From the NCBI GenBank assembly GCA_002269645.1, contig NIVC01000362.1:558001-622000 (forward strand): a DNA stretch of 64,000 nucleotides, in the 5' to 3' direction. Position 1 is the first letter of the stretch; every line of letters begins with the position of its first letter. The notes below the pieces were generated by a model. It had not been told where the DNA came from, did no database searches, and was given only the letters and a program-made list of their open reading frames with translations. This document shows positions 1,586 to 63,386 of the stretch, one piece after another. The position numbers were made by a program, and so were the translations under genes. Source of the DNA: Macrostomum lignano. Taxonomy: Eukaryota.

Positions 1586-1623
<38 letters not shown>

Positions 1624-41278: not shown

Positions 41279-41381
41279 TTTGTAGGCACACTATACTCGT
41301 AAAGTGATAAAATTTTAGTCAAATCATTCAAACAAGCACCAGTATAGTTAATCATGGTTTCAGTTCGGAATCAACGCACTT

Positions 41382-42516
41382 CTAGAGGACGCACTGATTG
41401 AATGGAACGGACATCTTCTGTTCCACATCTAGGCCTTCCATTGCTTCTAAAAATTCTTTGTTCGTGATGCGATTATGCTTGTCTTTGTCCACCTCGGACA
41501 GGGCGCGGCAGGCGATTGATTGCACCTGCGGGATGCGGATTAGTTGGCGGATTGGCGAGGCTTCTCTAGGATTAACTCTGGGGAGTGGGGTTGGAGGGAT
41601 AGGGAGTGGGGTTGAAGGCATGGGGAGTGGGGTTGAAGGGATGGGGAGTGGGGTTGAAGGGATGGGGAGTGGGGTTGAAGGCATGGGGAGTGGGGTTGAA
41701 GGGATGGGGAGTGGGGTTGAAGGCATGGGAGTGGGGTTGAAGGGATGGGGAGTGGGGTTGAAGGCATGGGGAGTGGGGTTGAAGGCATGGGGAGTGGGGT
41801 TGAAGGGATGGGGAGTGGGGTTGAAGGCATGGGGAGTGGGGTTGAAGGGATGGGGAGTGGGGTTGAAGGGATGGGGAGTGGGGTTGAAGGCATGGGGAGT
41901 GGGGTTGAAGGCATGGGGAGTGGGGTTGAAGGGATGGGGAGTGGGGTTGAAGGCATGGGGAGTGGGGTTGAAGGCATGGGGAGTGGGGTTGAAGGCATGG
42001 GGAGTGGGGTTGAAGGCATGGGGAGTGGGGTTGAAGGCATGGAAAGTGTTTTACCTGTTCCAAAGGCAGACGATTGCCAACCAGCATCTGCAGCAGTGAG
42101 CAGAGCTCAAAGGCTGTTAAAAACTCATTGCCCTCAATAGCCAGCATTCGATAGACGAATTGCACTTTAGCCAGCCGGCTGTCGGAGTCCGTAGCCGGCC
42201 GAAATACGGCCACAGCTGAGCAGAACTCCGGAAAGGTGAGCGTGTCAGCCGAGCCGGGGAACATGGCGGCAACGATGCGCTCAGCAAGAGGATTCGAGCT
42301 GAGCTCGGGATCGCTCAGCAGCTGACGGCGGGACAGAAGTTTCGGCGCGTCGGCTGGCGGTGCGGCAGCTGAAGGCCGACCGTCGCAGGTGCGCAGGCAG
42401 AGCTGACAGTAGCGCTGGTGCAGCTGGCGGACATTGGAGGCAGACAGGCCTGTGCTGGACACGATCGAGGCCACGTCGTATTGGGCCAGCGGGGAATGAG
42501 AGTAGGAGCCGCCCAT
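41382..42516 (-). CDS. CHP1: Calcineurin B homologous protein (CHP1-like EF-hand protein)
   Basis: Exons 42516-42055 and 41525-41382. MGGSYS myristoylation motif; PELSSNPLAERIV (cf. PELAINPLGDRII), AVFRP, MLVG and DVEQKMS all match CHP1. Confidence 0.88.
41580..42042. repeat. 21-bp G-rich minisatellite (ggggagtggggttgaagggat)
   Basis: Fills the single CHP1-like intron. Confidence 0.95.
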
Positions 42517-42649
42517 GGCGCCGCTGCGGGGGGAGCGATTAATACTACTGAGTTAGCTGCGATTGGGCAGTAGTGTGATAAATAGTCTGCGGTAGCTATG
42601 ATCCAGTAGCTTGATAATGCGATAGGCTGATTTAATGAAGGGTATAGAT

Positions 42650-42951
<302 letters not shown>

Positions 42952-43219
42952 CCAGTCCATTTTATCCGCAAATATAGAAAACCAGGAAGTAAAAAATTAA
43001 ATTAAAAAGCCAGGAATGACACATGAATTCATCATTTACTGTATTGCATTTAAATGAAAAAAAATATTGCAATTCCTACGTCAATATGATGTAAGGCAAA
43101 GGTGCTAGCACCTGAGACAAACTATTTATAATACTAAATTAATTTGCAAATATGATTTTTAATTAAAATATGGTACATAATTATTGTGATATTTTAAACA
43201 ATTTACTAACAGTGCTCAT

Positions 43220-44155
43220 GCTCACAATCTCACCATTCCTTGTGTCTTATACACAAAATTCACTATTCCTAGAATCTCCTGCTCAAAATATCACCATTCC
43301 AAGAATCTCCTGCTCAAAACCTCACCATTCCAAGAATCTCCTGCTCAAAATCTCACCATTCCAAGAATCTCCTGCTCAAAATCCCACCATTCCTAGAATC
43401 TCCGGCTCAAAATCTCACCATTCCAAGAATCTCCTGCTCAAAATCTCACCATTCCAAGAATCTCCTGCTCAAAATCCCACCATTCCTAGAATCTCATTCT
43501 TAAAATCTCACCATTCCAAGAATCTCCTGCTCAAAATCTCACCATTCCAAGAATCTCCTGCTCAAAATCCCACCATTCCTAGAATCTCATGCTCAAAATC
43601 TCACCATTCCAAGAATCTCCTGCTCAAAATCTCACCATTCCAAGAATCTCCGGCTCAAAATCTCACCATTCCTAGAATCTCCTGCTCAAAATCTAACCAT
43701 TCCAAGAATCTCCGGCTCAAAATCTCACCATTCCTAGAATCTCCTGCTCAAAATCTAACCATTCCTAGAATCTCCTGCTCAAAATCTCACCATTCCTAGA
43801 ATCTCATGCTTAAAATCACACCATTCTTAGAGCCTCATGCTTAAAATCTCACCATTCCTAGAATCTCCTGCATAAAATCCCACCATTCTTAGAGCCTCAT
43901 GGTCAAAATCTCACTATTCCAAGAATCTCATGCTCAAAATCTCACTATTCCTAGAATCTCCTGCATAAAATCCCACCATTCTTAGAGCCTCATGGTCAAA
44001 ATCTCATGCTCAAAATCTCACTATTCCTAGAATCTCCTGCTCAAAATCTCACCATTCCTAGAATCTCCTGCTCAAAATCCCACCATTCTTAGAACCTCAT
44101 GGTCAAAATCTCACTATTCCAAGAATCTCATGCTCAAAATCTCACTATTCCTAGT
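43220..44155. repeat. 31-bp minisatellite (ccattccaagaatctcctgctcaaaatctca)
   Basis: Tandem copies downstream of the DERA stop. Confidence 0.93.
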
Positions 44156-44253
44156 CTCAGGCAAAAAATCGGCAAAAATCTCACAACTATTAGAGTCAAA
44201 ACGCTAAAAAGTTCAGCGTACTTAGCTACTCAAACTCATAACCAACTCAACTA

Positions 44254-47200
44254 TCAAGCCATCGGCAAATCCCCAGCAGTGGCGTCCCGGCCAATCAGCA
44301 AGCGAAACGCGGATTTCTCAATTTCGCCCAGCAGACTGCTGGCTCCGATCCTGAGCAGGTTTGGCTGCAGCCAGTCAGGCCCCAGAGCGAACTGCACCAG
44401 GTGCAAATAGTCCAGCGCGTCCGCCGCAGTCCGGATGCCGCCTGCCGGCTTGAACCCGACTCGCCGGCCGGTGCGAGCGTGAAATTCGCTGATGGCTCGG
44501 AGCATCACCAGCGACAGGGGCAGGGTGGCGTTCACCGACTCCTGGGGTGCGAGGGGCGTTGGGTCATTTGGTAGCTGATTATTTGTCATTTGATAGCTTA
44601 TGACCAGTTACTATTGGTAGCTTATGACCTGTCATTTGGTAGCTTAAGACCAGTTACTTTTGGTAGCTTATGATCTGTCATTTGTTAGCTTATGACCTGT
44701 CATTTGGTAGCTTATGACCAGTTACTATTGGTAGCTTATGACCTGTCATTTGGTAGCTTATGACCAGTTACTATTGGTAGCTTATGATCTGTCATTTGGT
44801 AGCTTATGACCAGTTACTATTGGTAGCTTATGATCTGTCATTTGGTAGCTTATGACCTGTCATTTGGTAGCTTATGACCTGTCATTTGGTAGCTTATGAC
44901 CTGTCATTTGGTAGCTTATGACCTGTCATTTGCTAGCTTATGACCAGTTACTATTGGTAGCTTATGATCTGTCATTTGGTAGCTTATGACCTGTCATTTG
45001 GTAGCTTATGACCTGTCATTTGGTAGCTTATGACCTGTCATTTGGTAGCTTATGACCTGTCATTTGGTAGCTTATGACCTGTCATTTGGTAGCTTATGAC
45101 CAGTTACTATTGGTAGCTTATGATCTGTAATCTGGTAGCTTAAGACCTGTCATTTGGTAGCTTATGACCAGTTACTATTGGTAGCTTATGATCTGTCATT
45201 TGGTAGCATATGACCTGTCATTTGGTAGCTTATGATCTGTCATTTCGTAGCTTATGACCAGTTACTATTGGTAGCTTATGATTATGACCTGTCATTTGGT
45301 AGCTTAAGACCAGTTACTATTGGTAGCTTATGATCTGTCATCTGGTAGCATATGACCAGTTACTATTGGTAGCTTATGATCTGTCATCTGGTAGCTTATG
45401 ACCAGTTACTATTGGTAGCTTATGACCTGTCATTTGGTAGCTTAAGACCAGTTACTATTGGTAGCTTATGATCTGTCATCTGGTAGCATATGACCAGTTA
45501 CTATTGGTAGCTTATGATCTGTCATCTGGTAGCTTATGACCTGTCATCTGGTAGCTTATGACCTGTCATCTGGTAGCTTATGACCAGTTACTATTGGTAG
45601 CTTATGATCTGTCATTTGGTAGCATATGACCAGTTACTATTGGTAGCTTATGACCTGTCATTTGGTAGCTTAAGACCAGTTACTATTGGTAGCTTATGAT
45701 CTGTCATCTGGTAGCATATGACCAGTTACTATTGGTAGCTTATGATCTGTCATCTGGTAGCTTATGACCAGTTACTATTGGTAGCTTATGACCTGTCATT
45801 TGGTAGCTTAAGACCAGTTACTATTGGTAGCTTATGATCTGTCATCTGGTAGCATATGACCAGTTACTATTGGTAGCTTATGATCTGTCATCTGGTAGCT
45901 TATGACCTGTCATCTGGTAGCTTATGACCTGTCATCTGGTAGCTTATGACCAGTTACTATTGGTAGCTTATGATCTGTCATTTGGTAGCATATGACCAGT
46001 TACTATTGGTAGCTTATGATCTGTCATTTCGTAGCTTATGACCAGTTACTATTGGTAGCTTATGATTATGACCTGTCATTTGGTAGCTTAAGACCAGTTA
46101 CTATTGGTAGCTTATGATCTGTCATCTGGTAGCATATGACCAGTTACTATTGGTAGCTTATGATCTGTCATCTGGTAGCTTATGACCAGTTACTATTGGT
46201 AGCTTATGACCTGTCATTTGGTAGCTTAAGACCAGTTACTATTGGTAGCTTATGATCTGTCATCTGGTAGCATATGACCAGTTACTATTGGTAGCTTATG
46301 ATCTGTCATCTGGTAGCTTATGACCTGTCATCTGGTAGCTTATGACCTGTCATCTGGTAGCTTATGACCAGTTACTATTGGTAGCTTATGATCTGTCATT
46401 TGGTAGCATATGACCAGTTACTATTGGTAGCTTATGATCTGTCATTTGGTAGCATATGACCAGTTACTATTGGTAGCTTATGATCTGTCATCTGGTAGCA
46501 TATGACCAGTTACTATTGGTAGCTTATGATCTGTCATCTGGTAGCATATGACCAGTTACTATTGGTAGCTTATGATCTGTCATTTGGTAGCATATGACCA
46601 GTTACTATTGGTAGCTTATGATCTGTCATTTGGTAGCATATGACCAGTTACTATTGGTAGCTTATGATCTGTCATCTGGTAGCATATGACCAGTTACTAT
46701 TGGTAGCTTATGATCTGTCATCTGGTAGCTTATGACCTGTCATCTGGTAGCTTATGACCAGTTACTATTGGTAGCTTATGATCTGTCATCTGGTAGCTTA
46801 TGACCTGTCATTTGGTAGCTTAAGACCAGTTACTATTGGTAGCTTATGATCTGTCATCTGGTAGCTTATGACCTGTCATTTGGTAGCTTAAGACCAGTTA
46901 CTATTGGTAGCTATGATCTGTCATTTGGTAGCTTATGACCAGTTACTATTGGTAGCTTATGATCTGTCATTTCGTAGCTTATGACCAGTTACTATTGGTA
47001 GCTTATGATCTGTCATTTCGTAGCTTATGACCAGTTACTACTGGTAGCTTATGATCTGTCATTTGGTAGCTTATTATCTGTCATTTGGTAGCTCTTGAGA
47101 GGTATCTATCTCTCGCCTGTCATTGGGTATTTTTCTGACACTCAATGAGTCAATTGAGTACTTTCTGACACTATGTTAGCTGGAGCTTAAGAATCAACTG

Positions 47201-48778
47201 AGAATTGAAAATAAAGCCAATAGAACCAAACAAACCTTTCCCGTGCTGGTCTTAATAAAATCGGCCCCAGCGTACATGCAGACCAAGCTGGCCTTGTACA
47301 CAGTCTCGTAGGCGGCCAGCTCCCCAACGCCCAGTATAGTTTTTAGGCAGACAGAGGGTCCGCAGGCCTCTCGCATCGCGCGCACCTCCTCGTAGACATC
47401 TGACCAGCGACCCTATTACAGGTAGGAGTAATTTGATTGTACAAATCATATTTTATACTGCAGTTAATTATCGTGAAAAATATTTGCCAGCCAGCTTACT
47501 TTTTAAATTAAGTAGCAAGCAAAGAAAACAGCAGCTATTTTACAAGAGAAAAGTCGATGTAAATAAAAGTACAAGCGGTGCAGACTTCAAATTTCCCCAA
47601 AGACGACTTCAGAACAATTAAAATTTGTGTGCGATTCTCAAAACTTAATATTCATCAGATTTCATAGCTCCCGATTTTCATATCCCCTTAACTTCACATT
47701 TCCCAATCTTTACATTCCCTGTCACATTCCCCAATCTTCCTCAATCTTCACATTTCTTAATCTTTACATTCTCCAATCCTCAAATTCCCCAATTTTCACA
47801 TTCCCTAATCTTGACATTCCCCAATCTTGACATTCCCCAATCTGCATATTGCCTAAGCTTCACATTCCCTAACCTTGACATTCCCCAATCTTTACATTCT
47901 CCAATCTGCGCATTCTCTAACTGTCACATTCCCCAATCTTCATCAATCTTCCTCAATCTTCACATTTCTTAATCTTTACATTCTCCAATCCTCAACTTCT
48001 CCAATTTTCACATTCCCTAATCTTGACATTCCCCAATCTGCATATTGCCTAATCTTCACATTCCCGAATCTTGACATTCCCCAATCTGCATATTGCCTAA
48101 TCTTCACATTCCCTAATCTTGACTTTCCCCAATCTTTACATTCTCCAATCTGCACATTCCCTAACTGTCAAATTTCCCAATCTTCATCAATCTTCCCCAA
48201 TCTTGACATTCCCCAATCCTTACATTCCTCAATCTGCTCACCTGCAGGGCCAGTGTCCGATTAATCACAATATCAACCTCATTAGCGCCCTGCTCAACAG
48301 CCCACCGGATCTCGGCCAGGCGACTCTCCAAGCCGTACTGGCCGCTAGGAAAGCCGGTAGCAACGCAGGCCAGCCGAATTCGGTTGGAGGCGCCGATCTG
48401 ATCCAGTGCAGACTTGGCCGCGGCAAGCTGGTAAGGATACAGGCACACAGCCGCAGTGTGCAGCTCATCTTTATCGATGCCGTGCTCAAACTCTAACTTG
48501 TCCAGCACAGCGAATGCGAAAGGTCGGCGAGCCTTGTGACACAGACGGACAACATTGCTGGGACAGTCGTCCCCGGCCAGTGTGGTCAAGTCTATTAAAC
48601 TGGCCGCTTTCAATAGCCAGCCAAGGCGATATAGTTTACCATCGTTACTACTGTTAGCGGTTTCACTGTCCAGTCGATAGCGCCTGGTACCCCAGCGACA
48701 GTGCTCAGCGAGACTGTTGGCGCTGATGCACACGCCGTCAAGCAGATGAGTAGGCAACGGTAGAGCCGTGTGCTTCGC
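44254..48778 (-). CDS. DERA: Deoxyribose-phosphate aldolase
   Basis: Exons 48778-48242, 47412-47236, 44541-44254 (phase-0 introns). Motifs IDLTTLAGDD, VATGFPSGQ, EVDIVINR, LKTIL, DFIKTSTGK|ESVNAT, GFKPAGGIR, RIGASSLL. No in-frame ATG after the acceptor at 48779-48780. Confidence 0.95.
44590..47090. repeat. 22/24-bp two-variant minisatellite (tggtagcttatgacctgtcatt / tggtagcttatgaccagttactat)
   Basis: 2.5-kb array with higher-order blocks filling DERA intron 2. Confidence 0.97.
47690..48232. repeat. Degenerate ~18-bp repeat (cacattccccaatctt)
   Basis: Fills DERA intron 1. Confidence 0.85.
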
Positions 48779-50362
48779 CTTTTTGTTTGAAAAAATTAAA
48801 AAATGTTGTACATTTCGTTATTAAACTACTGACATGACAATGAAAGTAGCATGATGCAGATATTCAATTTAGATTTTTTTACTGCTAGCTTTTCTATATT
48901 GTTACTGTCAGTAGAGTAGACTGAAAATGACCAGTTAAAAATAATTAACTACTTCAGCTACAGACTGCACTACTGGGTTGACACTGTTGAGTAGCATGGT
49001 GCAAATATATGACATTTATTGAGGTTACCTATACCATCCCTATTATGCTATTTTTTAAGGTATTGAATTGTAAAGCGAAGCCAAATCTCACAAAGTCTAT
49101 AGGATGTGGTAGGTAATTAGCAGATCTACAACCGTGTTCATAAAGATAAATGTTCTGGCAAAGTAATCAGACTTTTTTATTACACGGAAGCAAGAAATGA
49201 AGAAATGACACGCAAGTTATACTGATAATTATCAAAACTTTACAACTGACTCTCGTACTGGATCGCATTTAATAGGAGAATTGAAAGACTCAACGTCAGT
49301 AGTATGCATCGGTTTTTATTGCTACAGAATAGTGTGCGTGTGTTGTGTGTGTGTGAAAAATGCAAACAATTAACAGTTCAATTTCCACAAGAAATAAGCG
49401 GTAGGTCTTCAGTAATTTATATTGGCATCGTCAATCGCATACAACAGATATAATACTAGGCTGAAGTTACGCGTGCAAGAATAAAGTTTTTATTGACAAA
49501 AAGTTATTAAAAATATAAAAAATCATTGTGAAGCACTGCTTGCTTTAACACCTGTGGTAGAGGGAAGTGGGAAGGCGGCGATGGCCCAGCAACTGAGGAT
49601 ATGGGAGGCTGGTAAAGCAACTGAAGATCTGGGAGGCTGGCCCAGCAACTGACACTCTGGGAGGCTGGCCCAGTAACTGAGGATCTGGGAGGCTGGCCCA
49701 GCAACTGAGGATCTGGGAGGCTGGCCCAGCAACTGAGAATCTGGGAGGCTGGCCCAGCAACTGAGAATCTGGGAGGCTGGCCCAGCAACTGAGAATCTAG
49801 GAGGCTGGCCCAGCAACTGAGGATCTGGGAGGCTGGCCCAGCAACTGAGAATCTGGGAGGCTGGCCCAGCAACTGAGAATCTGGGAGGCTGGCCCAGCAG
49901 CAACTGAGATCTGGGAGGCTGGCTGGCCCAGCAACTGAGGATCTGGGAGGCTGGTAAAGCAACTGAGAATCTGGGAGGCTGGCCCAGCAACTGAGGATCT
50001 GGGAGGCTGGCCCAGTAACTGAGGATCTGGGAGGCTGGCCCAGCAACTGAGGATCTGGGAGGCTGGCCCAACAACTGGGGATCTGGGAGGCTGGCCCAGC
50101 AACTGACACTCTGGGAGGCTGGCCCAGCAACTGACACTCTGGGAGGCTGGCCCAGCAACTGAGGATCTGGGAGGCTGGCCCAACTGGGGATCTGGGAGGC
50201 TGGCCCAGCAACTGACACTCTGGGAGGCTGGCCCAGCAACTGACACTCTGGGAGGCTGGCCCAGCAACTGACACTCTGGGAGGCTGGCCCAGCAACTGAG
50301 GATCTGGGAGACTGGCCCAGCAACTGACACTCTGTTAGGCTGGCTCAGCCGCGACAACACTA

Positions 50363-51505
50363 CTATACAACAGAAATGTCTTCAATAACATCGTCAACTG
50401 ACATCAGCGTAGTCGGATAGGATAGTCCATCGCTGACTGGCGGACAAGTGGACGGCAGCAAGACGTGTCTCCAGAACGACCTCCCAGGTGCATCGATGCA
50501 CAAGGCTTGTCTAAGATTTTTACGCCAGCCTAAATCGTACGGATTACGATAAGTCAATCCTTTAGCTAGCATAGATTTGGCCATACGCCGATTAATATGA
50601 GTCTCAATGCAGGTCTCATTGCGGCTGGCCAGAAACACGTGATAGGCTGTCAAACAGCCCAATACCAGAGCTACAGCCGAGGTGAGAACAATCTCATAAT
50701 AGACCATGTGGTGCACAGTGGCATACTGGAATAGCCAATCCAGTGCCGGTCTCTCCGCAGCCATAAAGGTCGAAGCATCAATGGAAGCTGCATCAACATC
50801 ATCGTCCCGATCCCAGCTGTAAAAGTGGTCATTATAAACCGGAGCAGCCACCAGCGCAACGTACACACAGCCGGCTAGCATGTACACGCAGAACAGTACA
50901 AAATGCTTATAATTGTACAATCCAACGCAAGAGTTAATCCACGGACAGTGATGATCCATGCGTAGGACGCATCGTTTGCATACGGCGCAATGATGCGCCC
51001 GAGGCGGCTTAGGGGCGACGCATCGCCGACAGACGCCAACAACTGGAAAAGTGCAACCGGCTGGCGGGGACCCGGGGTCGGAGAAGGCGGCGCAGTAGTA
51101 ATGAAACACAATGTTCACCAGCAGCCAGTGGCCGAACAGCAGGTGCCATAGACAGCGCAGCCGGCTCTCAAAGTACACGGCCGGCAATAGGCAAGTGTAG
51201 AATACGAATACTACTGAGGCGGTGAGTAGTATAACCAGGCAGACAAGTAGGGCGCCGAGTCTTTGAGCAACGGATTCGCCGATGCGAACCAGCGGCCAAA
51301 TGGCTGTCTCTATGCTGTAGTAGAAATCCGCGTGATGATTGTAGCAGAAGGCGCCGCAGAAGACTGCCAATTGGCGGCGGAGTTGGCGCCACAGGCGGTG
51401 CCTGCGGATCCGGCGGCAGCAGCGGCCGATCAGCAGCGCTGGCACTCGGCGTGTGCAGCGCTGAGGTGAGCGGAGGCGACGAGGCAAAACATTATTGGAG
51501 ATCAT
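50363..51505 (-). CDS. ZDHHC16: DHHC palmitoyltransferase, ZDHHC16-like, intronless (380 aa)
   Basis: CRRCVAPKPPRAHHCAVCKRCVLRMDHHCPWINSCVG DHHC domain. The N-terminal TM region (LVILLTASVV..Y.C.LP; WHLLFGHW...VFHYY) and the NETCIE motif fit ZDHHC16. Confidence 0.92.
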   Translation of the reverse strand: MISNNVLPRRLRSPQRCTRRVPALLIGRCCRRIRRHRLWRQLRRQLAVFCGAFCYNHHADFYYSIETAIWPLVRIGESVAQRLGALLVCLVILLTASVVFVFYTCLLPAVYFESRLRCLWHLLFGHWLLVNIVFHYYCAAFSDPGSPPAGCTFPVVGVCRRCVAPKPPRAHHCAVCKRCVLRMDHHCPWINSCVGLYNYKHFVLFCVYMLAGCVYVALVAAPVYNDHFYSWDRDDDVDAASIDASTFMAAERPALDWLFQYATVHHMVYYEIVLTSAVALVLGCLTAYHVFLASRNETCIETHINRRMAKSMLAKGLTYRNPYDLGWRKNLRQALCIDAPGRSFWRHVLLPSTCPPVSDGLSYPTTLMSVDDVIEDISVV

Positions 51506-51552
51506 GCGCAGTAAGGATGTCGGAAAAACATGTCTATTTCTAAAAGCACATG

Positions 51553-54330: not shown

Positions 54331-55611
54331 AAAAAGCCGTTTTTAACAAATAAAAAAACAAGAGCAAACTGAGACTATCAGAAAACAAAAGTTAGGCTTG
54401 ACTACTACGCTAGCAAGCGAGCATTCATAATCAGGTGAAAAGTAGTACAAAATGATTAGAGAACTATAGAGCAATCAGCAAATTACTCATGAAAAATATA
54501 GCGACAATATGATAATAGTAAAATAAATATAGTGGGAAAGCTGGAAGCATTAGGGTTAGAAAAAAAGACAAAGCTAACAACAACAATATCCGAACTGCTT
54601 TTTTGGACAAAGACTACATATATATAACAATCGGCACGATAAATATATGCAAGAAATTAGAGTTAAAGCATTTGGTAGCTATTAGTCAAGTTGAGGTGAA
54701 AATGCAGCATATGCTTAGATTTATTATATATAAGAATTAGATAAAATAGCTATAGAAGCTAAGCCAGGCAAAGCCAAAACGATATATAAGCGACTATAAT
54801 GTTAAAGCTTAATAAGGCAACGAGTGTTTGATGCACAACAAGCGCGTTATCAGCATAAAACAACACAGTTTTCTTAGTTTGATTTGCAGGCATTCTGATT
54901 AAACTGCAGTGCGGTTATCATTTAGAATAATCGGCGCTATGGGTTAGCAAAAATATTACCAAATATTTACGAATATTGTCGATATTGCAGACATTTTGAG
55001 TTAATTTCTACAGTTAGCAGATATTCATCCTTCAGGTTCAGCTACCCTCCCTGATCCTTCAGTGGGTCCAGCTACCCCTCCCTGATCCTTCCGTGGGTCC
55101 AGCTACCCTCCCTGATCCTTCAGTGGGTCGCCGCTACTCCCTCCCTGATCCTTCAGGGAGGCACTCACTCGAAGATACAATATCGTACCCTTATAACATA
55201 ACTAGAAGTACGATTTTGCAAACTTCTTTAAGAAAACGGAACAGAAAAGTGGCGTCAAAAGAAACGTTCCGTCCTATTAAAGAACCGTCAAGTTTTAAAT
55301 CAACTTTATGCAAAACAATATAGTTACTAGCTAACTGTTATTGCACTAATTAAAAATCACGCAAATAAATATAGTTTTATTGTTCGTCTGATTGTTATAA
55401 TGCTGCAAGTTGATTTTTAGTTCTATTTGACAGCGCGGAAACCGCTGTCATTTTCAAACTCGTACGTTGACCAATCCCCTTCATCGTTGCTGCCGCTTAT
55501 TGGCGCACAATACATCATAGACTGTTATTATTGAAGACTGCATGGCCATAGACAAATCAGCTTCAACGCTTGCATAGATAAAGACTGTGGAGGAGGACAG
55601 TGGAAAGCATG

Positions 55612-56160
55612 AACGACCATAGACTATTTTAACTAAACTCCCTCCTTTGCCTTCGCCTCTCTCGCGGTTCTTTCTCTCTTCGACCATAGACTATTTTAAC
55701 TAAACTCCCTCCTTTGCCTTCGCCTCTCTCGCAGTTCTTTCTCTCTTCGACCATAGACTATTTTAACTAAACTCCCTCCTTTGCCTTCGCCTCTCTCGCA
55801 GTTCTTTCTCTCTTCGACCATAGACTATTTTAACTAAACTCCCTCTTTTGCCTTCGCCTCTCTCGCGGTTCTTTCTCTCTTCGACCATAGACTATTTTAA
55901 CTAAACTCCCTCCTTTGCCTTTGCCTCTCTCGCAGTTCTTTCTCTCTTCGACCATAGACTATTTTAACTAAACTCCCTCCTTTGCCTTCGCCTCTCTCGC
56001 AGTTCTTTCTCTCTTCGACCATAGACTATTTTAACTGCACTGACTCTTTTTTGCCCCCCTCCTCTCTCGCGGTGAACATAGACTATTTCAACTACACTGA
56101 CTATCCTCCCTCTCGGTTCTTCCTCTCTTCGACCATAGACTATTTTAACTACACTCTATC
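55612..56160. repeat. 67-bp minisatellite (cgaccatagactattttaactaaactccc...)
   Basis: About 8 copies, decaying to the right. Confidence 0.9.
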
Positions 56161-56436: not shown

Positions 56437-56970
56437 TTACAAATCGAAGTCTTCACTAGGCGCTAATTGAGCTTTCTCTTTCGGCGACCGCCTCGGCGCA
56501 GGCACAGGAGGTGAAGAAAGATTAGGCTGCTGTTGTTGCTGCTTTTGCTTCTGCTGTTCGCGCATGTCTTTCATCTGTTGCCTGAGAGCTCGCTGCTTTC
56601 TATCGGCAATCATCTGTTCCAGACCTTCGCCGCTTCCGCCAGCGAGTTCGCCACGGTCGCTGTCGCCGCAGCTTGACCCATAGTCGTCCAGTTCCGAGTC
56701 GGAGTCCGAGCTGGCTAATCTGTCGTCTTCGCGTTGAAAATCGAAAGTTCGATTCATGGCCGCGATTAGGCCGCCAACGTCGCTCACTCCACCGCCAGTG
56801 TCGCCGGCGTCGTCGGCCAAGCAATCGACGGAGGCGGCGGATTCGTCGCTGATTCCGCAGGAGGCGCCGCCGCTGCCGCTGGCGCCGGCACTGGCGCCTT
56901 CAGCGGTTGAAGCGGTTCGTTTGGCGCCAGCTCGAGGCGCCGGCACTGGCGGCTGTCTGACGGTGGACAT
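56437..56970 (-). CDS. Unknown acidic, low-complexity protein (177 aa) with two PPVPAPR motifs
   Basis: Single GC-rich ORF with the same compositional style as neighbouring genes; acceptors 9 and 27 nt upstream of the ATG; no recognised family. Confidence 0.55.
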   Translation of the reverse strand: MSTVRQPPVPAPRAGAKRTASTAEGASAGASGSGGASCGISDESAASVDCLADDAGDTGGGVSDVGGLIAAMNRTFDFQREDDRLASSDSDSELDDYGSSCGDSDRGELAGGSGEGLEQMIADRKQRALRQQMKDMREQQKQKQQQQQPNLSSPPVPAPRRSPKEKAQLAPSEDFDL

Positions 56971-57103
56971 TGTGAATTGCTGTCTCTCTCTTGCAAACTG
57001 CAGATGAGCATCAAGATGGTTGCGTAGGCTTCAAGACATTGGCTTTTCCAATCGAAAATAAATCCAGGTAGATAGTAGAAGACAGGCAGACAGAGTGATA
57101 GAT

Positions 57104-58005
57104 GATCTACCTGCTCAGTGATCTACTTGCTCAGTGATCTACCTGCTCAGTGATCTACCTGCTCAGTGATCTACTTGCTCAGTGATCTACCTGCTCAGTG
57201 ATCTACTTGCTCAGTGATCTACCTGCTTAGTGATCTACATGCTCAGTGATCTACCTGCTCAGTGATCTACCTGCTCAGTGATTTACTTGCTCAGTGATTT
57301 ACTTGCTCAGTGATCTACCTGCTCAGTGATCTACCTGCTCAGTGATCTACCTGGTCAGTGATCTACCCGACTAGTGATCTACCTGCTTAGTGATCTACCT
57401 GCTCAGTGATCTACCTGCCTAGTGATCTACCTGCCTTGTGATCTACCTGCCTTGTGATCTACCTGCTTAGTGATCTACCTGCTCAGTGATCTACCTGCTT
57501 AGTGATCTACCTGCTCAGTGATCTACCTGCTCAGTGATCTACTTGCTCAGTGATCTACCTGCTCAGTGATCTACCCGACTAGTGATCTACGTGCTTAGTG
57601 ATCTACCTGCTCAGTGATCTACCTGCTCAGTGATCTACCCGACTAGTGATCTACCTGCTTAGTGATCTACCTGCTCAGTGATCTACCTGCCTAGTGATCT
57701 ACCTGCTTAGTGATCTACCTGCTCAGTGATCTACCTGCTCAGTGATCTACCTGCTCAGTGATCTACCTGCTCAGTGATCTACCTGCTTAGTGATCTACCT
57801 GCTCAGTGATCTACCTGCTTAGTGATCTACGTGCTTAGTGATCTACCTGCTCAGTGATCTACCTGCTTAGTGATCTACGTGCTTAGTGATCTACCTGCTC
57901 AGTGATCTACCTGCTCAGTGATCTACCTGCTCAGTGATCTACCTGCTTAGTGATCTACCTGCTCAGTGATCTACCTGCTTAGTGATCTACCTGCTTAGTG
58001 ATCTA
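57104..58005. repeat. 16-bp minisatellite (gtgatctacctgctca); same family at ~60912-61382
   Basis: One array is intergenic and one is in a DHX16 intron. Confidence 0.95.
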
Positions 58006-58263
58006 TTCTACATTTGGTATTTTATAAAAATGATAATGAAAACCAACAACACGGATTCAATATGATAATTAGCGCATACATAAGTTACCAATAAAGTTGA
58101 AATGCAAATTAACAGCAAGCATATATACCGTATTATCGCGTTTATTTAAAAATATTTGCAAACATGATAGCATTGAGAGTCGCAGAAAATATAAGTATAT
58201 AATAAACAGTTACATTTATTAAACGCAGAAAATCATTTATACTCGTAGTTTACCAAATAAGCG

Positions 58264-61200
58264 TCAACCTTTAACAGCCGGAGCAGACGAATAATCCCTA
58301 GTAACGTCTTCTTTGGCTTTGCCTGTCTGTTTGGGCATTTTTCTGGTCTCCGCCTCGATGTCTTTAGCCTTGTAGTAGTGCGGCGCCACCTCCAGCAGCC
58401 AGCGCGGATCGATCTCGACGACCTGACGCATGAACTCCTTAGTGGTGAACACTAGCTCGAAGTAGATCACCCAGGGCGGTCGGTCTTCTACTACGGACGA
58501 GTTCGGGTGCACCTGCGGTTTTTAAGATTAGCGGCGGTAGGTAGATTTACCGCTCAATCAAGTTTAGAAAAACGGCTCCTCCCTGATCCTTCAGTGGGTG
58601 CCGCTAACCCTCCCCGTTCCTTCAGTGGGTGCCGCTAACCCTCCCCGATCCTTCAGTGGGTGCCGCTAACCCTCCCTGATCCTTCAGTGGGTGCCGCTAA
58701 CCCTCCCCGTTCCTTCAGTGGGTGCCGCTAACCCTCCCCGATCCTTCAGTGGGTGCCGCTAACCCTCCCCGTTCCTTCAGTGGGTGCCGCTAACCCTCCC
58801 TGATCCTTCAGTGGGTGCCGCTAACCCTCCCCGATCCTTCAGTGGGTGCCGCTAACCCTCCCTGATCATTCAGTGGGTGCCGCTAACCCTCCCCGATCCT
58901 TCAGTGGGTGTCGCTAACCCTCCCCGATCATTCAGTGGGTGCCGCTAACCCTCCCCGATCCTTCAGTGGGTGCCGCTAACCCTCCCCGATCATTCAGTGG
59001 GTGCCGCTAACCCTCCCCGATCCTTCAGTGGGTGCCGCTAACCCTCCCTGATCATTCAGTGGGTGCCGCTACCCTCTCCCTGATACTTGAGCAGGTTCAG
59101 AGGTTCAGATACCCTCTCTAAAGCTTGAGCAGGCTCAGATACCCCTCTCTAAAGCTTGAGCAGGCTCAGATATCCCTCTCTAAAGCTTGAGCAGGCTCAG
59201 ATATCCCTCTCTAAAGCTTGAGCAGGCTCAGATATCCCTCTCTAAAGCTTGAGCAGGCTCAGATATCCCTCTCTAAAGCTTGAGCAGGCTCAGATACCCC
59301 TCTCTAAAGCTTGACCAGGCTCAGATACCCTCTCTAAAGCTTGAGCAGGCTCAGATATCCCTCTCTAAAGCTTGAGCAGGTTCAGATATCCCTCTCTAAA
59401 GCTTGAGCAGGCTCAGATATCCCTCTCTAAAGCTTGAGCAGGCTCAGATACCCCTCTCTAAAGCTTGAGCAGGCTCAGATGCCCCTAAAGCTTGAGCAGG
59501 CTCAGATACCCCTCTCTAAAGCTTGAGCAGGCTCAGATACCCCTCTCTAAAGCTTGAGCAGGCTCAGATATCCCTCTCTAAAGCTTGAGCAGGCTCAGAT
59601 ATCCCTCTCTAAAGCTTGAGCAGGCTCAGATATCCCTCTCTAAAGCTTGAGCAGGCTCAGATATCCCTCTCTAAAGCTTGAGCAGGCTCAGATACCCCTC
59701 TCTAAAGCTTGACCAGGCTCAGATACCCTCTCTAAAGCTTGAGCAGGCTCAGATATCCCTCTCTAAAGCTTGAGCAGGTTCAGATATCCCTCTCTAAAGC
59801 TTGAGCAGGCTCAGATATCCCTCTCTAAAGCTTGAGCAGGCTCAGATACCCCTCTCTAAAGCTTGACCAGGCTCAGATACCCTCTCTAAAGCTTGAGCAG
59901 GCTCAGATATCCCTCTCTAAAGCTTGAGCAGGTTCAGATATCCCTCTCTAAAGCTTGAGCAGGCTCAGACACCCTCTCTAAAACTTGAGCACGCTCAGAT
60001 ACCCCTCTCTAAAGCTTGAGCAGGCTCAGATACCCCTCTCTTGAGCACAGCACGCACCTGCACAGTGTGCTGATGCTTCACAGTCCGGTAGCCGTCCCTG
60101 CTAAACTTGGCAGTGTGATAAAAGAATCCAGCAGTAATAGCCTTGCGAATAGGCACCGAGTCGCTATTGCAGGAGACTAAATCAACTTCAACGCGTTCCA
60201 ACAGGCCTTCAAATTGATCTCGAATATCTCTGGCCCGTTTCATCGATCGGTGCTGAATAAAATTTTCGTAGCACCATTGAACGGAATAGTTAGCCAATTT
60301 CCACTGGTTGAACACGTTCAACAGAGTGAGATGGTCGCCGCCTGGTCTGTAGAAACTCTTCCTAGCCGTGTCGGCATGTATTGCCTTGTCCTTAGGCCGA
60401 TAGAATATCGCATTATTAACTGACAGCATTGCCGCTATGGTGATAATCTCGTCAGAGCATTTGTACTTCTCCGATGCCAGAATCATTTTCGATAGCATGG
60501 GATCGCACGGCAACTCGGCCATTCGCCTACCCAGTTTAGTCAGCTCGCCTTTGTGATTGAGCGCGCCCAGCGCGTATAGCTGCTCCAGCGCCATCACCAG
60601 AGTGTCATTCGGCGGCGGGTCCATGAAATCAAAGTGCAATAAATCATTGATGCCAAGAGACTTCAATAATAGGACAACGTTGCCTAGATTAGTCCGCTGG
60701 ATCTCCGGGACTGGCTGGCTCTCCAGCTCGTGCTTGTAGGTCCAGGCCGTGTACAAGCGGAAACATTTGCCGTCCCTGACTCGGCCGGCCCGGCCGGCGC
60801 GCTGGTCTGCGCCAGCCTTGGATATTGGCTGCACTAGCAGCGACTCCATGCCCGTGCGGGCGTTGTACGACTTCACCTGGGTTGGCGGGGTGGGGCAATG
60901 GTGTGTATCGTGACCTACCTAGTGATCTGCCTAGTGATCTGCTTAGTGATCTACCTGCCTTGTGATCTACCTGCCTTGTGATCTACCTGCCTAGTGATCT
61001 ACCTGCCTTGTGATCTACCTGCCTTGTGATCTACCTGCCTTGTGATCTACCTGCCTTGTGATCTACCTGCCTTGTGATCTACCTGCCTAGTGATCTACCT
61101 GCCTAGTGATCTACTTGCCTAGTGATCTACCGGCCTAGTGATCTACCTGCCTTGTGATCTACCTGCCTTGTGATCTACTTGCCTAGTGATCTACTTGCCT

Positions 61201-63386
61201 AGTGATCTACCTGCCTTGTGATCTACCTGCCTTGTGATCTACCTGCCTAGTGATCTACCTGCCTAGTGATCTACCTGCCTAGTGGTCTACCTGTCTAGTG
61301 ATCTACCTGCCTAGTGATCTACCTGCCTAGTGGTCTACCTGCCTAGTGATCTGCCTGCCTAGTGATCTACCTGCCTAGTGATCAATCGGTAGATAGATCC
61401 GTCCATTTACAGATTCGTTCATCTATCTACCGATTCATCAATCTATCTACCAATTCATCCATCTATATACTGATTCATCAATCTATCTACCGATTCATCT
61501 ATTCATCTACCAATTAATCCATCCACTGATTAATCTAATCAATAAATCTACCGATAGATCTGAACATAATTACTAATTGAGTGTCTATAAAGAATACAGC
61601 TAGCTCATATCTACCATAGCGCAGACGCAAAAGTCAAAAAATCAATAATCACCTTGCTATATCCAGTATCGATGACGTACACAATGCCGTCAATAGTAAG
61701 CGAAGTCTCGGCAATATTAGTACCAATAACAACCTTCCTAGCGTTAGGCGGAGTCGGCTCAAATATTTTGCCTTGCATATCCGAGGGCAGAGTGGAATAG
61801 ATTGGCGTTATGATCAGTTCGCGCATTTTCGAACCCAATCGTCGAGTTTTCTCTTTGAGAATCTCTTCGGCAGTTTCAATCTCTTCTTGGCCAGTGAGGA
61901 ATACTAGAATATCGCCAGGCAGAGGCTGGGTGAGATGAATTTGCAGCACCGACACTACAGCGGCGTCAACGTAATCAGCCTCGGGCGCTTTCGTATAGTA
62001 GATATCGACATTGTACCGCCGGCCAGGTATGCGAAAGATATTCGCGTCGTCAAAGAATGTAGAGAATTTATCGGCATCCAAAGTGGCCGAACTAATCAAT
62101 AGCTTGAGCTCGGGACGGAATCTGGCAATGTCTTTTACTAAACCGAAAAGTACATCAGTGTGCAGAGTCCGCTCGTGCGCCTCGTCAATAATCATAACGC
62201 TATAGGAGCCCAGATCCGGCTCGGTTAGGAATTCGCGCAGCAGCATGCCGTCTGTCATGTACTTGACCACGGTTCGATCGCTGGTGCAGTCCTCGAATCG
62301 GATGCTGTAGCCAACCTCGTTGCCTAGCTTCACGCCCATCTCTTGGGCTACGCGAGCGGCTACTGACATGGCGGCTACGCGGCGAGGCTGGGTGCAGCCA
62401 ATCTTTTTACCGTCGCGACAATAGCCGGCCTCGTATAGGTACTGCGGTATCTGCGTGGACTTGCCGCTGCCCGTCTCGCCCTCGATAATTAGCACCTGCG
62501 CGTGGCAGAGGGGGGCGATTTTGGGGCGATTATCAGGGCGATTGTTGGGGCGATTATCAGGGCGATTGTTGGGGCGATTATCAAGGCGATTGTTGGGGCG
62601 ATTATCAGGGCGATTGTTGGGGCGATTATCAGGGCGATTGTTGGGGCGATTATCAGGGCGATTGTTGGGGCGATTATCAGGGCGATTGTTGGGGCGATTA
62701 TCAGGGCGATTGTTGGGCAATTGTTGGGGCGATTATCGGGGCGATTATCGGGGCGATTATTGGGGCGATTATCGTGATTGTTGGGGCGATTATCAGGGCG
62801 ATTGTTGAGGCGATTATCGGGGCGATTGTTGGGGCGATTATCGTGGTGATTGTTGGGGCGATTATCAGGGCGATTATCGGGGCGATTGTTGGGGCGATTA
62901 TCGGGGCGATTGTTGGGGTTGTTGGGGCGATTATCGGGACGATTGTGGGAGCGATTGTCGTGGTGATTTTGGGGCGATTATCGAAGTGAATTTGAAAATT
63001 AGAGGTTCTTCTAATTTCCCACTGCAAACCTGGTTAGTCTCGATCGCTTTTAACAGATCGTCGCGAAACGGATACACCGGCAGGCTCTGCCGCGTCTCCT
63101 GCAGCGTCAGCCGCCGCTTCTGCGCCTCGGTCAGTTGAGACTTGCCTCCCTCACTGTCCTCATCCTGTTGATCCTGACTGCCGCGCATAGTAACCGCTCG
63201 AACAAAATCGATCTCGTCGTCCAGCAGATAGCCGCCATATTCGTCGTCGTCTTTGGCTTTGGCGACTTTTCTGGCGTCGCGAGCACCGACGGAGAAGGTG
63301 GCAGCGGCCAGGTGCTCGGTCTCCCAGCGTTTCTGCTCGCCATGGGGACCTTTCTCATGCTCGTCCTCCAGGTAGCGGTCTTCAAT
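58264..63386 (-). CDS. DHX16: DEAH-box pre-mRNA splicing helicase DHX16 (Prp2), 5'-partial
   Basis: Exons 63386-63030, 62495-61653, 60876-60058, 58512-58264, all phase 0. Motifs [25 protein letters not shown] and QRAGRAGR, plus DHX16-type EQKRWE..L.AA..S.GARDA. AATAAA at 58220-58215. Earlier exons lie beyond the window. Confidence 0.97.
58580..60045. repeat. Two abutting 31-bp minisatellites filling the last DHX16 intron
   Basis: ccctccccgatccttcagtgggtgccgctaa (58580-59095; related copies at ~55030-55155), then gagcaggctcagatatccctctctaaagctt (59088-60045). Confidence 0.95.
62515..62985. repeat. 24-bp (2 x 12) minisatellite (ggggcgattatcagggcgattgtt)
   Basis: Fills a DHX16 intron. Confidence 0.93.

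What the first reader, a model, noticed from the sequence alone, without database searches (positions are those of the whole stretch)
41382..63386. Six co-oriented housekeeping-type genes with acceptors at their starts: candidate SL trans-spliced operon with minisatellite spacers
Seen: DHX16, a 177-aa ORF, NUPR1-like, ZDHHC16, DERA and CHP1-like all lie on the - strand, 1.3-2.6 kb apart, and most of each gap is tandem repeat. Every downstream gene has an AG acceptor just before its coding start: 56998-56999 or 56980-56981 (27 or 9 nt before ATG), 53802-53803 or 53799-53800 (8 or 5 nt), 51540-51541 (34 nt), 48779-48780 (0 nt) and 42524-42525 (7 nt). I found no convincing upstream first exons or promoters. 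Known: flatworms, nematodes and tunicates resolve polycistronic pre-mRNAs by SL trans-splicing. Inference: this is one polycistronic unit whose intercistronic regions have become minisatellites.
Basis: partly seen in the sequence, partly recalled or inferred. Interest (0 to 1): 0.72.

Follow-up and report, generated by a model that had tools for sequence, protein, structure and literature searches.

The report
Annotated Macrostomum trans-spliced gene cluster
This is a six-gene, same-strand cluster in the flatworm Macrostomum lignano that the published genome annotation already treats as one spliced-leader trans-spliced transcription unit; its repeat-filled spacers are a known, genome-wide trait of this species, so the finding is real but ordinary.

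Summary
The window is identical to Macrostomum lignano Mlig_3_7 scaffold NIVC01000362.1 (window x = record x + 558000).

The AGs carry no weight: 92% of random ATGs in the window have an AG within 36 nt upstream. The minisatellites are not specific to the spacers. They fill 87% of intron bases and 56% of spacer bases.

The operon reading is still supported, by outside evidence:
- The authors' annotation names DHX16, DERA and CHP1-like Mlig020924 g11, g16 and g17, sharing one transcriptional-unit prefix.
- All five downstream coding sequences are 5'-partial and begin within about 10 nt of an acceptor.
- Older UniProt models begin without Met directly after acceptors.
- DERA has no ATG of its own, so it needs the AUG at the end of the spliced leader.
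- Ustyantsev & Berezikov (2021) already describe M. lignano operons whose spacers are inflated by repeats.

Corrections: 63386 is an internal DHX16 exon, and the real ATG lies 1.8 kb beyond the window. The likely ZDHHC16 acceptor is 51461-51462, not 51540-51541.

Side lead: the last 12 nt of the spliced leader are encoded in the genome next to the NUPR1-like start.

The parts
58264..63386 (-). DHX16 (Prp2-type DEAH helicase), the part of the gene inside the window. Exons: 63386-63030, 62495-61653, 60876-60058, 58512-58264 (stop codon 58264-58266). The first about 217 codons and the ATG lie beyond the window end, at window-equivalent position 65807.
   Evidence: The exon model reads through with GT..AG introns and is 100% identical to PAA84805.1 'BOX15_Mlig020924g11', 972 aa. 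UniProt A0A1I8ISN2 starts 'LTVHSTM', directly after a CAG acceptor 18 nt before the ATG.
56437..56970 (-). 177-aa acidic, low-complexity ORF with no known homologues; intronless.
   Evidence: ORF. No Pfam hit. No homologue among 1.84e9 representative proteins. The annotated coding sequence is 189 aa, 5'-partial, and begins at 57006.
56998..56999 (-). Candidate SL acceptor for ORF177 (CATCTGCAG|TTTGC), 27 nt before the ATG. It is the only listed site that matches YTNCAG. An SL AUG joined here would be in frame (MFARERQQFT-MSTV...).
   Evidence: The annotated 5' end lies 9-11 nt upstream of it.
53500..53793 (-). NUPR1/p8-like gene, 97 aa, intronless.
   Evidence: Pfam Phospho_p8, 28 bits against a cut-off of 25. 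The annotated 100-aa 5'-partial coding sequence begins at 53802.
53805..53816 (-). Genome-encoded ATTTATTGCATG, identical to the last 12 nt of the M. lignano SL. It directly abuts the annotated NUPR1-like 5' end (53804-53802) and is followed by CAG|CAG| (AG at 53802-53803 and 53799-53800).
   Evidence: Longest SL match in the whole window, and the top-scoring 48-nt segment out of 25,582 sampled. It is identical in the paralogous locus.
50363..51505 (-). ZDHHC16-type DHHC palmitoyltransferase. Intronless ORF of 380 aa counted from the genomic ATG; probably expressed from the SL AUG joined at 51460.
   Evidence: Pfam DHHC, E = 6e-32. Homologues are ZDHHC16. The annotated 362-aa 5'-partial coding sequence begins at 51451.
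51461..51462 (-). Likely true SL acceptor of ZDHHC16 (CTCCGCTCACCTCAG|CGCTGC), 45 nt inside the genomic-ATG ORF. An SL AUG joined here is in frame (MRCTRRVPALL...).
   Evidence: UniProt A0A1I8F879 begins 'RCTRRVPALL', directly after this CAG. The GenBank coding sequence begins 9 nt downstream. Frames checked.
44254..48778 (-). DERA (deoxyribose-phosphate aldolase). Exons: 48778-48242, 47412-47236, 44541-44254. There is no in-frame ATG of its own.
   Evidence: Exon model. It is 100% identical to PAA84801.1 'BOX15_Mlig020924g16, partial'. An upstream in-frame TAA lies 14 codons before the exon start with no ATG in between, read from the sequence.
48779..48780 (-). SL acceptor of DERA (AAAAAG|GCGAAG). 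The SL's terminal AUG supplies the start codon (M-AKHTALPLP...). A second in-frame AG lies at 48773-48774.
   Evidence: Three independent M. lignano DERA models begin 'AKHTALPLP' without Met, directly after this AG: PAA85201.1 with its identical UniProt entry A0A1I8GIW0, A0A1I8IRQ2 and A0A1I8F717. Frames checked.
41382..42516 (-). CHP1-like EF-hand protein, 201 aa, with an MG... N-myristoylation-type start. Exons: 42516-42055 and 41525-41382.
   Evidence: Exon model. Best PDB hit is CHP1/p22, E = 6.7e-22. The annotated entry PAA84800.1 'BOX15_Mlig020924g17, partial' begins at 42513.
42524..42525 (-). Candidate SL acceptor for CHP1-like (CGCTCCCCCCGCAG|CGGCGCC-ATG), with a strong polypyrimidine tract. 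An SL AUG joined here is out of frame and opens an 81-codon overlapping uORF.
   Evidence: The annotated 5' end lies 8-10 nt downstream.
57103..58005 (.). Spacer 1 minisatellite: 16-mer, 56 copies. AATAAA signals at 58220 and 58146 precede it. The same 16-mer family fills the DHX16 intron at 60939-61383.
   Evidence: The paralogous locus has 30 copies at the same place.
53913..56155 (.). Spacer 2 arrays: 67-mer at 55614-56155, 31-mer at 55035-55156, 44-mer at 53913-54324. This is the largest spacer: 2643 nt, or 1567 nt after tandem repeats are subtracted.
   Evidence: The unique parts have no ORF of 80 aa or more and no Rfam match.
51553..53307 (.). Spacer 3 arrays: 44-mer at 52872-53307 and 21-mer at 51553-52254. 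The first AATAAA after the NUPR1-like stop is at 52801, beyond the 44-mer array.
49582..50349 (.). Spacer 4 array: 28-mer, 27 copies, starting 14 nt after the ZDHHC16 stop. The first AATAAA is at 49494, beyond the array. The same family occurs at 39179-40117 and 31339-31572.
42649..44201 (.). Spacer 5 arrays: 31-mer at 43215-44201 and (TCTG)n at 42649-42950. ATTAAA at 43163 follows the first array.
44563..47093 (.). Example of an intron made of minisatellite: DERA intron 2 holds a 22/46-mer array of 2.5 kb. All seven introns in the cluster are 60-94% tandem repeat.

Best explanation
The region is a six-gene island in the Macrostomum lignano genome (NIVC01000362.1, about 599,382-623,807, - strand). 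The genes, in order, are DHX16, an orphan 177-aa ORF, NUPR1-like, ZDHHC16, DERA and CHP1-like.

It is most likely transcribed as one long Pol II precursor. That precursor would be cut into monocistronic mRNAs by 3'-end cleavage and polyadenylation of each upstream cistron, and by trans-splicing of the single 35-nt SL (ending in AUG) onto a YAG acceptor 0-45 nt from the start of each coding region.

What the SL AUG does at each gene:
- DERA: the SL AUG is the only available start codon.
- ZDHHC16: it is very probably also the start codon.
- DHX16 and ORF177: it is in frame and would add a few residues.
- NUPR1-like and CHP1-like: it is out of frame and opens an overlapping uORF.

The kb-scale spacers are short unique intercistronic segments inflated by minisatellite arrays. 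The same array families fill the introns and the flanks, so the arrays are best read as neutral, fast-evolving passengers of this genome rather than operon-specific parts.

Shown here: gene content, order and strand; the absence of an ATG in DERA; the annotation names and the 5'-partial coding sequences; the repeat anatomy. Inferred: co-transcription from one promoter, and the exact acceptors for ORF177, NUPR1-like and CHP1-like.
For: - Species and locus. The window equals Mlig_3_7 NIVC01000362.1 exactly.
- Annotation. It lists the same six genes on one strand, with no other called gene in the 10 kb upstream or the 7 kb downstream.
- Shared unit name. DHX16 is Mlig020924g11 (complete), DERA is g16 (partial) and CHP1-like is g17 (partial). 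In the duplicate locus, DHX16 is Mlig005237g1 and DERA is g5. The authors give one prefix to transcriptional units that cluster at 95% identity, and cut units into genes at SL-read and poly(A) peaks (PMC5730564). Unrelated genes can therefore share a prefix only through a unit that spans them.
- 5'-partial coding sequences. All five downstream coding sequences are 5'-partial and begin at most about 10 nt from an acceptor.
- Older models. ML2 UniProt models begin without Met directly after acceptors: DHX16 with LTVHSTM, ZDHHC16 with RCTRRV and DERA with AKHTALP.
- DERA start codon. DERA exon 1 has no in-frame ATG, and both nearby AGs put the SL AUG in frame.
- Spacer lengths. Stop-to-start gaps after tandem repeats are subtracted are 390, 1567, 817, 816 and 448 nt. 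Four of the five pass the published criterion of less than 1 kb after repeat adjustment (PMC8629364).
- Literature. That paper reports repeat-inflated operon spacers and operons of up to nine genes in this species. Use of the SL 3'-AUG as initiator is known in flatworms (Cheng et al. 2006, cited in PMC9851317).
Against: - I could not inspect SL-read tracks, RAMPAGE data or the coordinates of the transcriptional unit. Co-transcription rests on my reading of the naming rule.
- A StringTie/TACO unit could be bridged by reads that map to several places in the minisatellites.
- The annotated 5' ends are offset from the nearest AG by 1-11 nt, and not in a consistent direction.
- The annotated NUPR1-like 5' end directly abuts a genome-encoded 12-nt SL suffix. 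This could have produced false 'SL reads'.
- The ORF177 to NUPR1-like spacer stays at about 1.4-1.6 kb after tandem repeats are subtracted. That is above the published 1-kb cut-off and leaves room for a promoter.
- Only one acceptor fits YTNCAG.
- The numbering g11-g17 implies g1-g10 somewhere that I could not locate.
- DERA's neighbours in Schistosoma haematobium and Mesocestoides corti are PDE4 and NOT2/3/5-domain genes, so the gene order is not ancient.
Confidence: 0.7

Rival explanations
1. Each gene, or some of them, has its own promoter in the unique part of its upstream spacer. Each makes a short outron-bearing primary transcript that is SL trans-spliced on its own. The co-orientation would then be a gene-dense island, not an operon.
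For: About 60% of SL trans-spliced M. lignano genes are not assigned to operons (PMC8629364). The spacers keep 390-1567 nt of unique DNA, far more than the roughly 100-nt mode reported for operon spacers. The region upstream of DHX16 looks just like the internal spacers: an array, then about 110 nt of unique sequence, then a CAG 18 nt before the ATG. Sequence alone therefore cannot tell a promoter region from an intercistronic one. 5'-partial coding sequences would also arise for monocistronic trans-spliced genes.
Against: DHX16, DERA and CHP1-like share one transcriptional-unit prefix in two independent loci. Six of six genes share one strand, p about 0.03 by chance. Four of the five gaps pass the published operon distance criterion.
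Confidence: 0.22
2. The genes are conventional and not trans-spliced. The 5'-partial coding sequences and the shared prefix would be artefacts of the annotation pipeline: imprecise cutting, SL-like genomic sequence, and repeat-bridged assemblies.
For: The annotated starts are offset from AGs by up to 11 nt. A genome-encoded SL suffix sits at the NUPR1-like 5' end. AG acceptors near ATGs are expected by chance.
Against: DERA has no start codon of its own. Three independent models from two different assemblies begin directly after the same AG. The same pattern holds for ZDHHC16 and DHX16. No upstream first exon is annotated for any of the five genes.
Confidence: 0.05
3. The minisatellite arrays are functional operon parts, for example spacers that uncouple 3'-end formation from downstream trans-splicing or that slow Pol II, rather than neutral passengers.
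For: Every spacer carries at least one array. In four genes the array lies between the stop codon and the first canonical poly(A) signal. All 21 arrays keep their position in the duplicate locus.
Against: Arrays are denser in introns (87%) than in spacers (56%), and they fill the gene-free flanks too. The same families occur in introns, spacers and flanks. Copy numbers differ up to three-fold between the two copies. The duplication is recent, with unique DNA 92-99.6% identical, so retained positions say little about constraint.
Confidence: 0.03

Closest known systems
Macrostomum lignano 'transcriptional units' and operons (Wudarski et al. 2017, PMC5730564; Ustyantsev & Berezikov 2021, PMC8629364)
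   Same: Same species, same assembly and the same SL. The cluster has same-strand neighbours, trans-spliced downstream genes and spacers swollen by tandem repeats, and it collapses to sub-kb distances once repeats are subtracted. Conserved housekeeping genes are typical of the class. This locus is already split into Mlig020924 g11-g17 in the deposited annotation.
   Different: One spacer (ORF177 to NUPR1-like) stays above 1 kb after subtracting tandem repeats only, so the published rule might split the cluster into 2 + 4 genes. Most published operons have two or three genes; six or seven is in the upper tail, with a reported maximum of nine.
Caenorhabditis elegans SL2-type operons
   Same: A polycistronic Pol II precursor is resolved by 3'-end formation coupled to SL trans-splicing. 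Genes are housekeeping-biased, with 2-8 genes per operon.
   Different: C. elegans uses a dedicated SL2 family and spacers of about 100 nt with a Ur element. Here there is a single SL, the raw spacers are 1.3-2.6 kb, and no SL2-like specialisation is known.
Operons of parasitic flatworms (Schistosoma, Echinococcus and others; PMC12582326)
   Same: Flatworm SLs end in AUG, operons are resolved by SL trans-splicing, and the SL AUG can act as initiator (Cheng et al. 2006).
   Different: Candidate operons there are defined by spacers of 300 bp or less (200-1000 bp in earlier work). DERA's neighbours in a schistosome and a cestode are different genes, so this cluster is not shared with them.
Kinetoplastid polycistronic transcription units
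   Same: Long co-oriented arrays of unrelated genes, each mRNA capped by SL trans-splicing, with few recognisable promoters.
   Different: In kinetoplastids all genes are trans-spliced, the units hold tens to hundreds of intronless genes, and the spacers are not arrays of minisatellites.
Dinoflagellate relict-SL retrogenes (PMC6050394, PMC5585692)
   Same: A piece of the SL is encoded in the genome directly upstream of a coding region, as seen here at the NUPR1-like gene and perhaps at ZDHHC16.
   Different: Dinoflagellate relics are widespread, often repeated in series, and well supported. Here there is one 12-nt and one 9-nt match, with no poly(A) tract or clear target-site duplication.

Membership tests
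M. lignano SL operon (criteria of PMC8629364) | Immediately adjacent genes on the same strand, not interrupted by a gene on the other strand | tested here: met
   Six of six genes are on the - strand, and no opposite-strand gene is called between them.
M. lignano SL operon (criteria of PMC8629364) | The downstream gene of each pair is SL trans-spliced (SL-containing reads at its 5' end) | tested here: inconclusive
The indirect evidence is as follows. All five coding sequences are 5'-partial and begin at most about 10 nt from an acceptor. Models for DERA and ZDHHC16 begin without Met directly after an AG. DERA lacks an ATG of its own. The NUPR1-like call may be confounded by a genomic SL-like 12-mer.
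M. lignano SL operon (criteria of PMC8629364) | Repeat-adjusted intergenic distance below 1 kb | tested here: inconclusive
   With tandem repeats only subtracted, stop-to-start gaps are 390, 1567, 817, 816 and 448 nt. Four of five pass and one fails. The paper measures from transcript end to transcript start and also subtracts RepeatMasker hits, which I could not reproduce.
M. lignano SL operon (criteria of PMC8629364) | Trans-acceptor motif [T/C]TNCAG at the junction (present at about 44% of published sites) | tested here: not met
   Only ORF177's 56998-56999 matches. The others are CCTCAG, CCGCAG, ATGCAG and AAAAAG. The motif is not obligatory in the paper, so this weighs little.
Polycistronic operon in the strict sense | One promoter and one primary transcript spanning all cistrons | not testable with these tools
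   There is only the shared transcriptional-unit prefix, Mlig020924 g11/g16/g17 and Mlig005237 g1/g5, read against the authors' naming rule.
SL-AUG-initiated ORF (Cheng et al. 2006; slORF, PMC9851317) | No usable in-frame AUG in the exon, and the SL's terminal AUG falls in frame at the acceptor | tested here: met
   In DERA an in-frame TAA lies 14 codons upstream, there is no ATG, and both AGs give an in-frame M-AKHT... or M-HTAL.... Translation itself was not tested.
Relict-SL retrogene (dinoflagellate type) | Genome-encoded SL remnant at the 5' end, intronless copy, poly(A) remnant, target-site duplication | tested here: inconclusive
   A 12-nt SL suffix sits at the NUPR1-like gene and a 9-nt SL core plus CATG at ZDHHC16. 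Both genes are intronless. There is no A-tract and no convincing duplication. About 97 nt of unrelated sequence lies between the upstream array and the remnant.

The most novel reading that the evidence does not exclude
The genome-encoded SL remnants would be scars of retroposed, SL-capped mRNAs that landed inside an existing polycistronic unit. The remnants are the last 12 nt of the SL at 53805-53816 next to the intronless NUPR1-like gene, and the SL core CTTACTGCG fused to CATG at the ZDHHC16 ATG. The NUPR1-like gene sits between two related 44-bp arrays. Such a copy could be expressed at once, because trans-splicing removes the need for its own promoter. That would make retroposition a route of operon growth in an animal, mirroring the relict-SL retrogenes of dinoflagellates.
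Probability: 0.12. Interest if true: 0.55.

Novelty: already known. Interest (0 to 1): 0.15.

Why it matters
The finding does not change what is known. M. lignano operons, their repeat-inflated spacers and flatworm use of the SL AUG are all published, and this locus is already cut into trans-spliced genes in GenBank.

Its use is as a clean worked example:
- A six-gene cluster in which one enzyme, DERA, has no start codon of its own.
- Every intron and every spacer is built around a minisatellite.
- A recent duplicate shows how fast the arrays change length.

It also shows that an 'AG before the ATG' carries no information on its own. The one thread worth a genome-wide follow-up is whether SL remnants encoded next to gene starts mark retroposed genes.

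Tried and rejected
Searches that found nothing:
- Exact look-ups of the window's ZDHHC16 and ORF177 proteins in the contig index.
- Supplement searches of the eLife 2016 and Sci Rep 2018 M. lignano papers, by gene name and by unit id. Their tables are truncated.
- A full-text search for Mlig020924 and Mlig005237.
- Exact look-ups of ten alternative N-termini for ORF177, NUPR1-like, CHP1-like and ZDHHC16.
- Rfam on the whole window.
- The full 35-nt SL with up to 3 mismatches. It is absent from the window, so there is no SL RNA gene here.
- Pfam on ORFs in the left 40 kb of the window. No gene was recognised.
- ORFs and self-similarity in the large ORF177 to NUPR1-like spacer. I found no hidden gene and no dispersed repeat beyond the 31-mer.

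Analyses that were uninformative:
- Comparing the two paralogous loci for constraint on spacers. The copies are too similar, at 92-99.6% identity, to say anything.
- Synteny. DERA's neighbours in S. haematobium and M. corti are unrelated genes.

Rejected readings:
- 63386 as the start of DHX16. It is an internal exon.
- 51540-51541 as the ZDHHC16 acceptor. The SL AUG joined there hits a stop after 2 codons.
- A simple retrocopy model for the NUPR1-like gene. There is no poly(A) remnant and no clear target-site duplication.

The bacterial promoter/terminator scanner was not used because it does not apply to a flatworm.


Full report
**Where the window comes from.** The 380-aa DHHC ORF has a Macrostomum lignano UniProt entry as its best hit. 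A homologue search with the DERA model returned GenBank protein PAA84801.1 at 100% identity. The contig that encodes it, NIVC01000362.1 of assembly GCA_002269645.1 (Mlig_3_7), matches the window base for base over 24.5 kb. Window coordinate x equals record coordinate x + 558000. This is the annotated genome of Wudarski et al. 2017 (PMC5730564).

**Checking the observation.**
- All six genes are on the - strand, and their identities hold. The 177-aa ORF has no detectable homologue.
- I rebuilt the spliced genes with canonical GT..AG introns:
  - DHX16 exons: 63386-63030, 62495-61653, 60876-60058, 58512-58264.
  - DERA exons: 48778-48242, 47412-47236, 44541-44254.
  - CHP1-like exons: 42516-42055, 41525-41382.
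- Stop-to-start gaps are 1293, 2643, 1994, 1584 and 1737 nt. Tandem repeats make up 70, 41, 59, 48 and 74% of them.
- That observation has no statistical weight. Of 1992 ATGs in the window, 92% have an AG within 36 nt upstream and 42% have a CAG. Only one listed site, 56998-56999, fits the published trans-acceptor motif YTNCAG.
- Position 63386 is not the start of DHX16. The annotated protein has 972 aa, and its ATG lies at window-equivalent position 65807.

**The repeats are not a spacer feature.**
- Tandem repeats cover 0% of exon bases, 87% of intron bases and 56% of spacer bases in the cluster. They cover 37.5% of the whole window.
- Each of the seven introns is essentially two splice sites around one or two arrays.
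- The same unit families occur in introns and in spacers. The 16-mer is at 57103-58005 and 60939-61383. The 31-mer is at 55035-55156 and 58578-59088. The 28-mer is at 49582-50349, 39179-40117 and 31339-31572.
- The 10 kb upstream of DHX16 is built the same way.
- A duplicate locus, NIVC01000341.1, is colinear. It carries all 21 arrays at the same positions but with copy numbers that differ up to three-fold. Unique DNA there is 92-99.6% identical.
- The arrays therefore predate a recent duplication and change length quickly. They look like passengers of this genome. The authors report 15% of it as simple and tandem repeats.

**Evidence for SL trans-splicing at these gene starts.**
- The M. lignano SL is a single 35-mer ending in ATG.
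- In the GenBank annotation, gene boundaries were set by cutting RNA-seq 'transcriptional units' at SL-read and poly(A) peaks.
- All five downstream coding sequences are 5'-partial. They begin at 57006, 53802, 51451, 48769 and 42513, each within about 10 nt of an acceptor. None has an upstream exon.
- Gene models from the older ML2 assembly begin without methionine directly after an acceptor:
  - DHX16 A0A1I8ISN2 begins 'LTVHSTMSSS', after CTCAG|, 18 nt before the ATG.
  - ZDHHC16 A0A1I8F879 begins 'RCTRRVPALL', after CACCTCAG| at 51461-51462.
  - DERA A0A1I8IRQ2 and A0A1I8F717, and the paralogue PAA85201.1, all begin 'AKHTALPLP', after AAAAAG| at 48779-48780.
- DERA exon 1 has no in-frame ATG between an upstream stop and the conserved core. 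Both nearby AGs put the SL's AUG in frame. DERA therefore depends on the SL for its start codon, a mechanism shown for schistosomes (Cheng et al. 2006, cited in PMC9851317).
The site at 51461-51462 gives an open in-frame product.
- The SL AUG is also in frame for DHX16 and ORF177. It is out of frame for NUPR1-like and CHP1-like, where it opens overlapping uORFs of 56-81 codons.

**Evidence for one transcription unit.**
- DHX16, DERA and CHP1-like are named BOX15_Mlig020924 g11, g16 and g17. In the duplicate locus, DHX16 is Mlig005237 g1 and DERA is g5.
- According to the Methods, a prefix is shared by units that cluster at 95% identity, and genes are pieces cut from units.
- Unrelated genes can share a prefix only if some assembled unit spans them. 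That this holds in two loci makes an accident less likely.
- The island is bounded by at least 10 kb (upstream) and at least 7 kb (downstream) without called genes.
- Subtracting tandem repeats leaves 390, 1567, 817, 816 and 448 nt between stop and start. Four of the five gaps meet the published operon rule for this species: same strand, downstream gene trans-spliced, less than 1 kb after repeat subtraction.
- The same paper states that repeats contribute substantially to operon spacers, and that operons reach nine genes (PMC8629364).

**What remains open.**
- I could not view SL reads, RAMPAGE data or unit coordinates.
- The annotated 5' ends are offset from AGs by 1-11 nt in both directions.
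- One spacer stays above 1 kb after tandem repeats are subtracted.
- The DHX16 upstream region looks like any internal spacer, so sequence alone cannot place the promoter.
- The numbering leaves g1-g10 unaccounted for, and one number between g11 and g16 has no protein.
- A model with separate promoters plus independent trans-splicing therefore keeps about 0.2 probability.
- Gene order is not shared with a schistosome or a cestode.

**Comparison and verdict.** The cluster works like the published M. lignano operons and appears to be one of them. It differs from C. elegans operons, which use a dedicated SL2 and spacers of about 100 nt. It also differs from operons of parasitic flatworms, where spacers are 300 bp or less (PMC12582326), by its single SL and its kb-scale, repeat-filled spacers. 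Those are known traits of this species.

**Side lead.**
- The longest match to the SL anywhere in the window is its last 12 nt, at 53805-53816. It sits directly against the annotated 5' end of the intronless NUPR1-like gene.
- A 9-nt SL core (CTTACTGCG) is fused to CATG at the genomic ATG of the intronless ZDHHC16.
- Both remnants are identical in the duplicate locus.
- The NUPR1-like gene lies between two related 44-bp arrays.
- This could be a scar of retroposed SL-capped mRNAs, as in dinoflagellates. It could equally be chance, or a source of false SL reads in the annotation.
- I found no poly(A) remnant and no clear target-site duplication, so I rate the retroposition reading at about 0.12.

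Noticed in passing
window 53805-53816 (-): ATTTATTGCATG, the last 12 nt of the M. lignano spliced leader, is encoded in the genome. It directly abuts the annotated 5' end of the intronless NUPR1-like gene and is the best SL match in the whole window. It may be a retroposition scar, or a source of false SL-read calls.
   Followed up: partly
window 51505-51515 (-): CTTACTGCG (SL positions 7-15) is fused to CATG, which is the genomic ATG of ZDHHC16. It looks like an SL with an internal deletion. It scores in the top 1.5% of background segments, so on its own it is weak.
   Followed up: partly
window 52872-53307 and 53913-54324: The NUPR1-like gene sits in about 600 nt of unique DNA between two related 44-bp minisatellite arrays that share a core of about 23 nt. 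It looks as if the gene had been inserted into one array. No clear target-site duplication was found.
   Followed up: partly
window 41526-42054, 44542-47235, 47413-48241, 58513-60057, 60877-61652, 62496-63029, 63387-64000: Every intron in the cluster is 60-94% minisatellite (87% overall), so each is essentially two splice sites around an array. Introns are richer in repeats than the spacers.
   Followed up: yes
window 48778 (-); GenBank PAA84801.1 and PAA85201.1: DERA has no start codon of its own, and all public M. lignano DERA models lack an initial Met. The enzyme appears to depend on the AUG at the 3' end of the spliced leader.
   Followed up: yes
window 32793-36042: The 35-bp array is split in the window (32326-32792 and 36043-37412) by about 3.25 kb of AT-rich DNA. 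This DNA is absent from the duplicate locus, where the array is continuous. I found no terminal repeats and no recognisable transposase ORF.
   Followed up: partly
window 24294-26318 (-): Three consecutive ORFs of 266, 149 and 277 aa look like one broken gene of about 690 aa, possibly from a mobile element. They have no Pfam match.
   Followed up: partly
window 50349-50363, 44201-44254, 41280-41382, 53307-53500: For ZDHHC16, DERA, CHP1-like and NUPR1-like, the first canonical AATAAA/ATTAAA comes only after a minisatellite that starts 14-190 nt past the stop codon. The arrays may therefore lie inside the 3' UTRs.
   Followed up: partly
L003 5-8985 (upstream of DHX16, beyond the window): One 47-bp minisatellite occurs as four separate arrays within 9 kb upstream of DHX16, separated by unique blocks. 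There is no ORF of 120 aa or more apart from a read-through of the repeats.
   Followed up: no
window 1091-1742: A (TAC)n microsatellite of about 217 copies. The left 8 kb of the window is almost wholly made of arrays with strong strand-composition skew.
   Followed up: no
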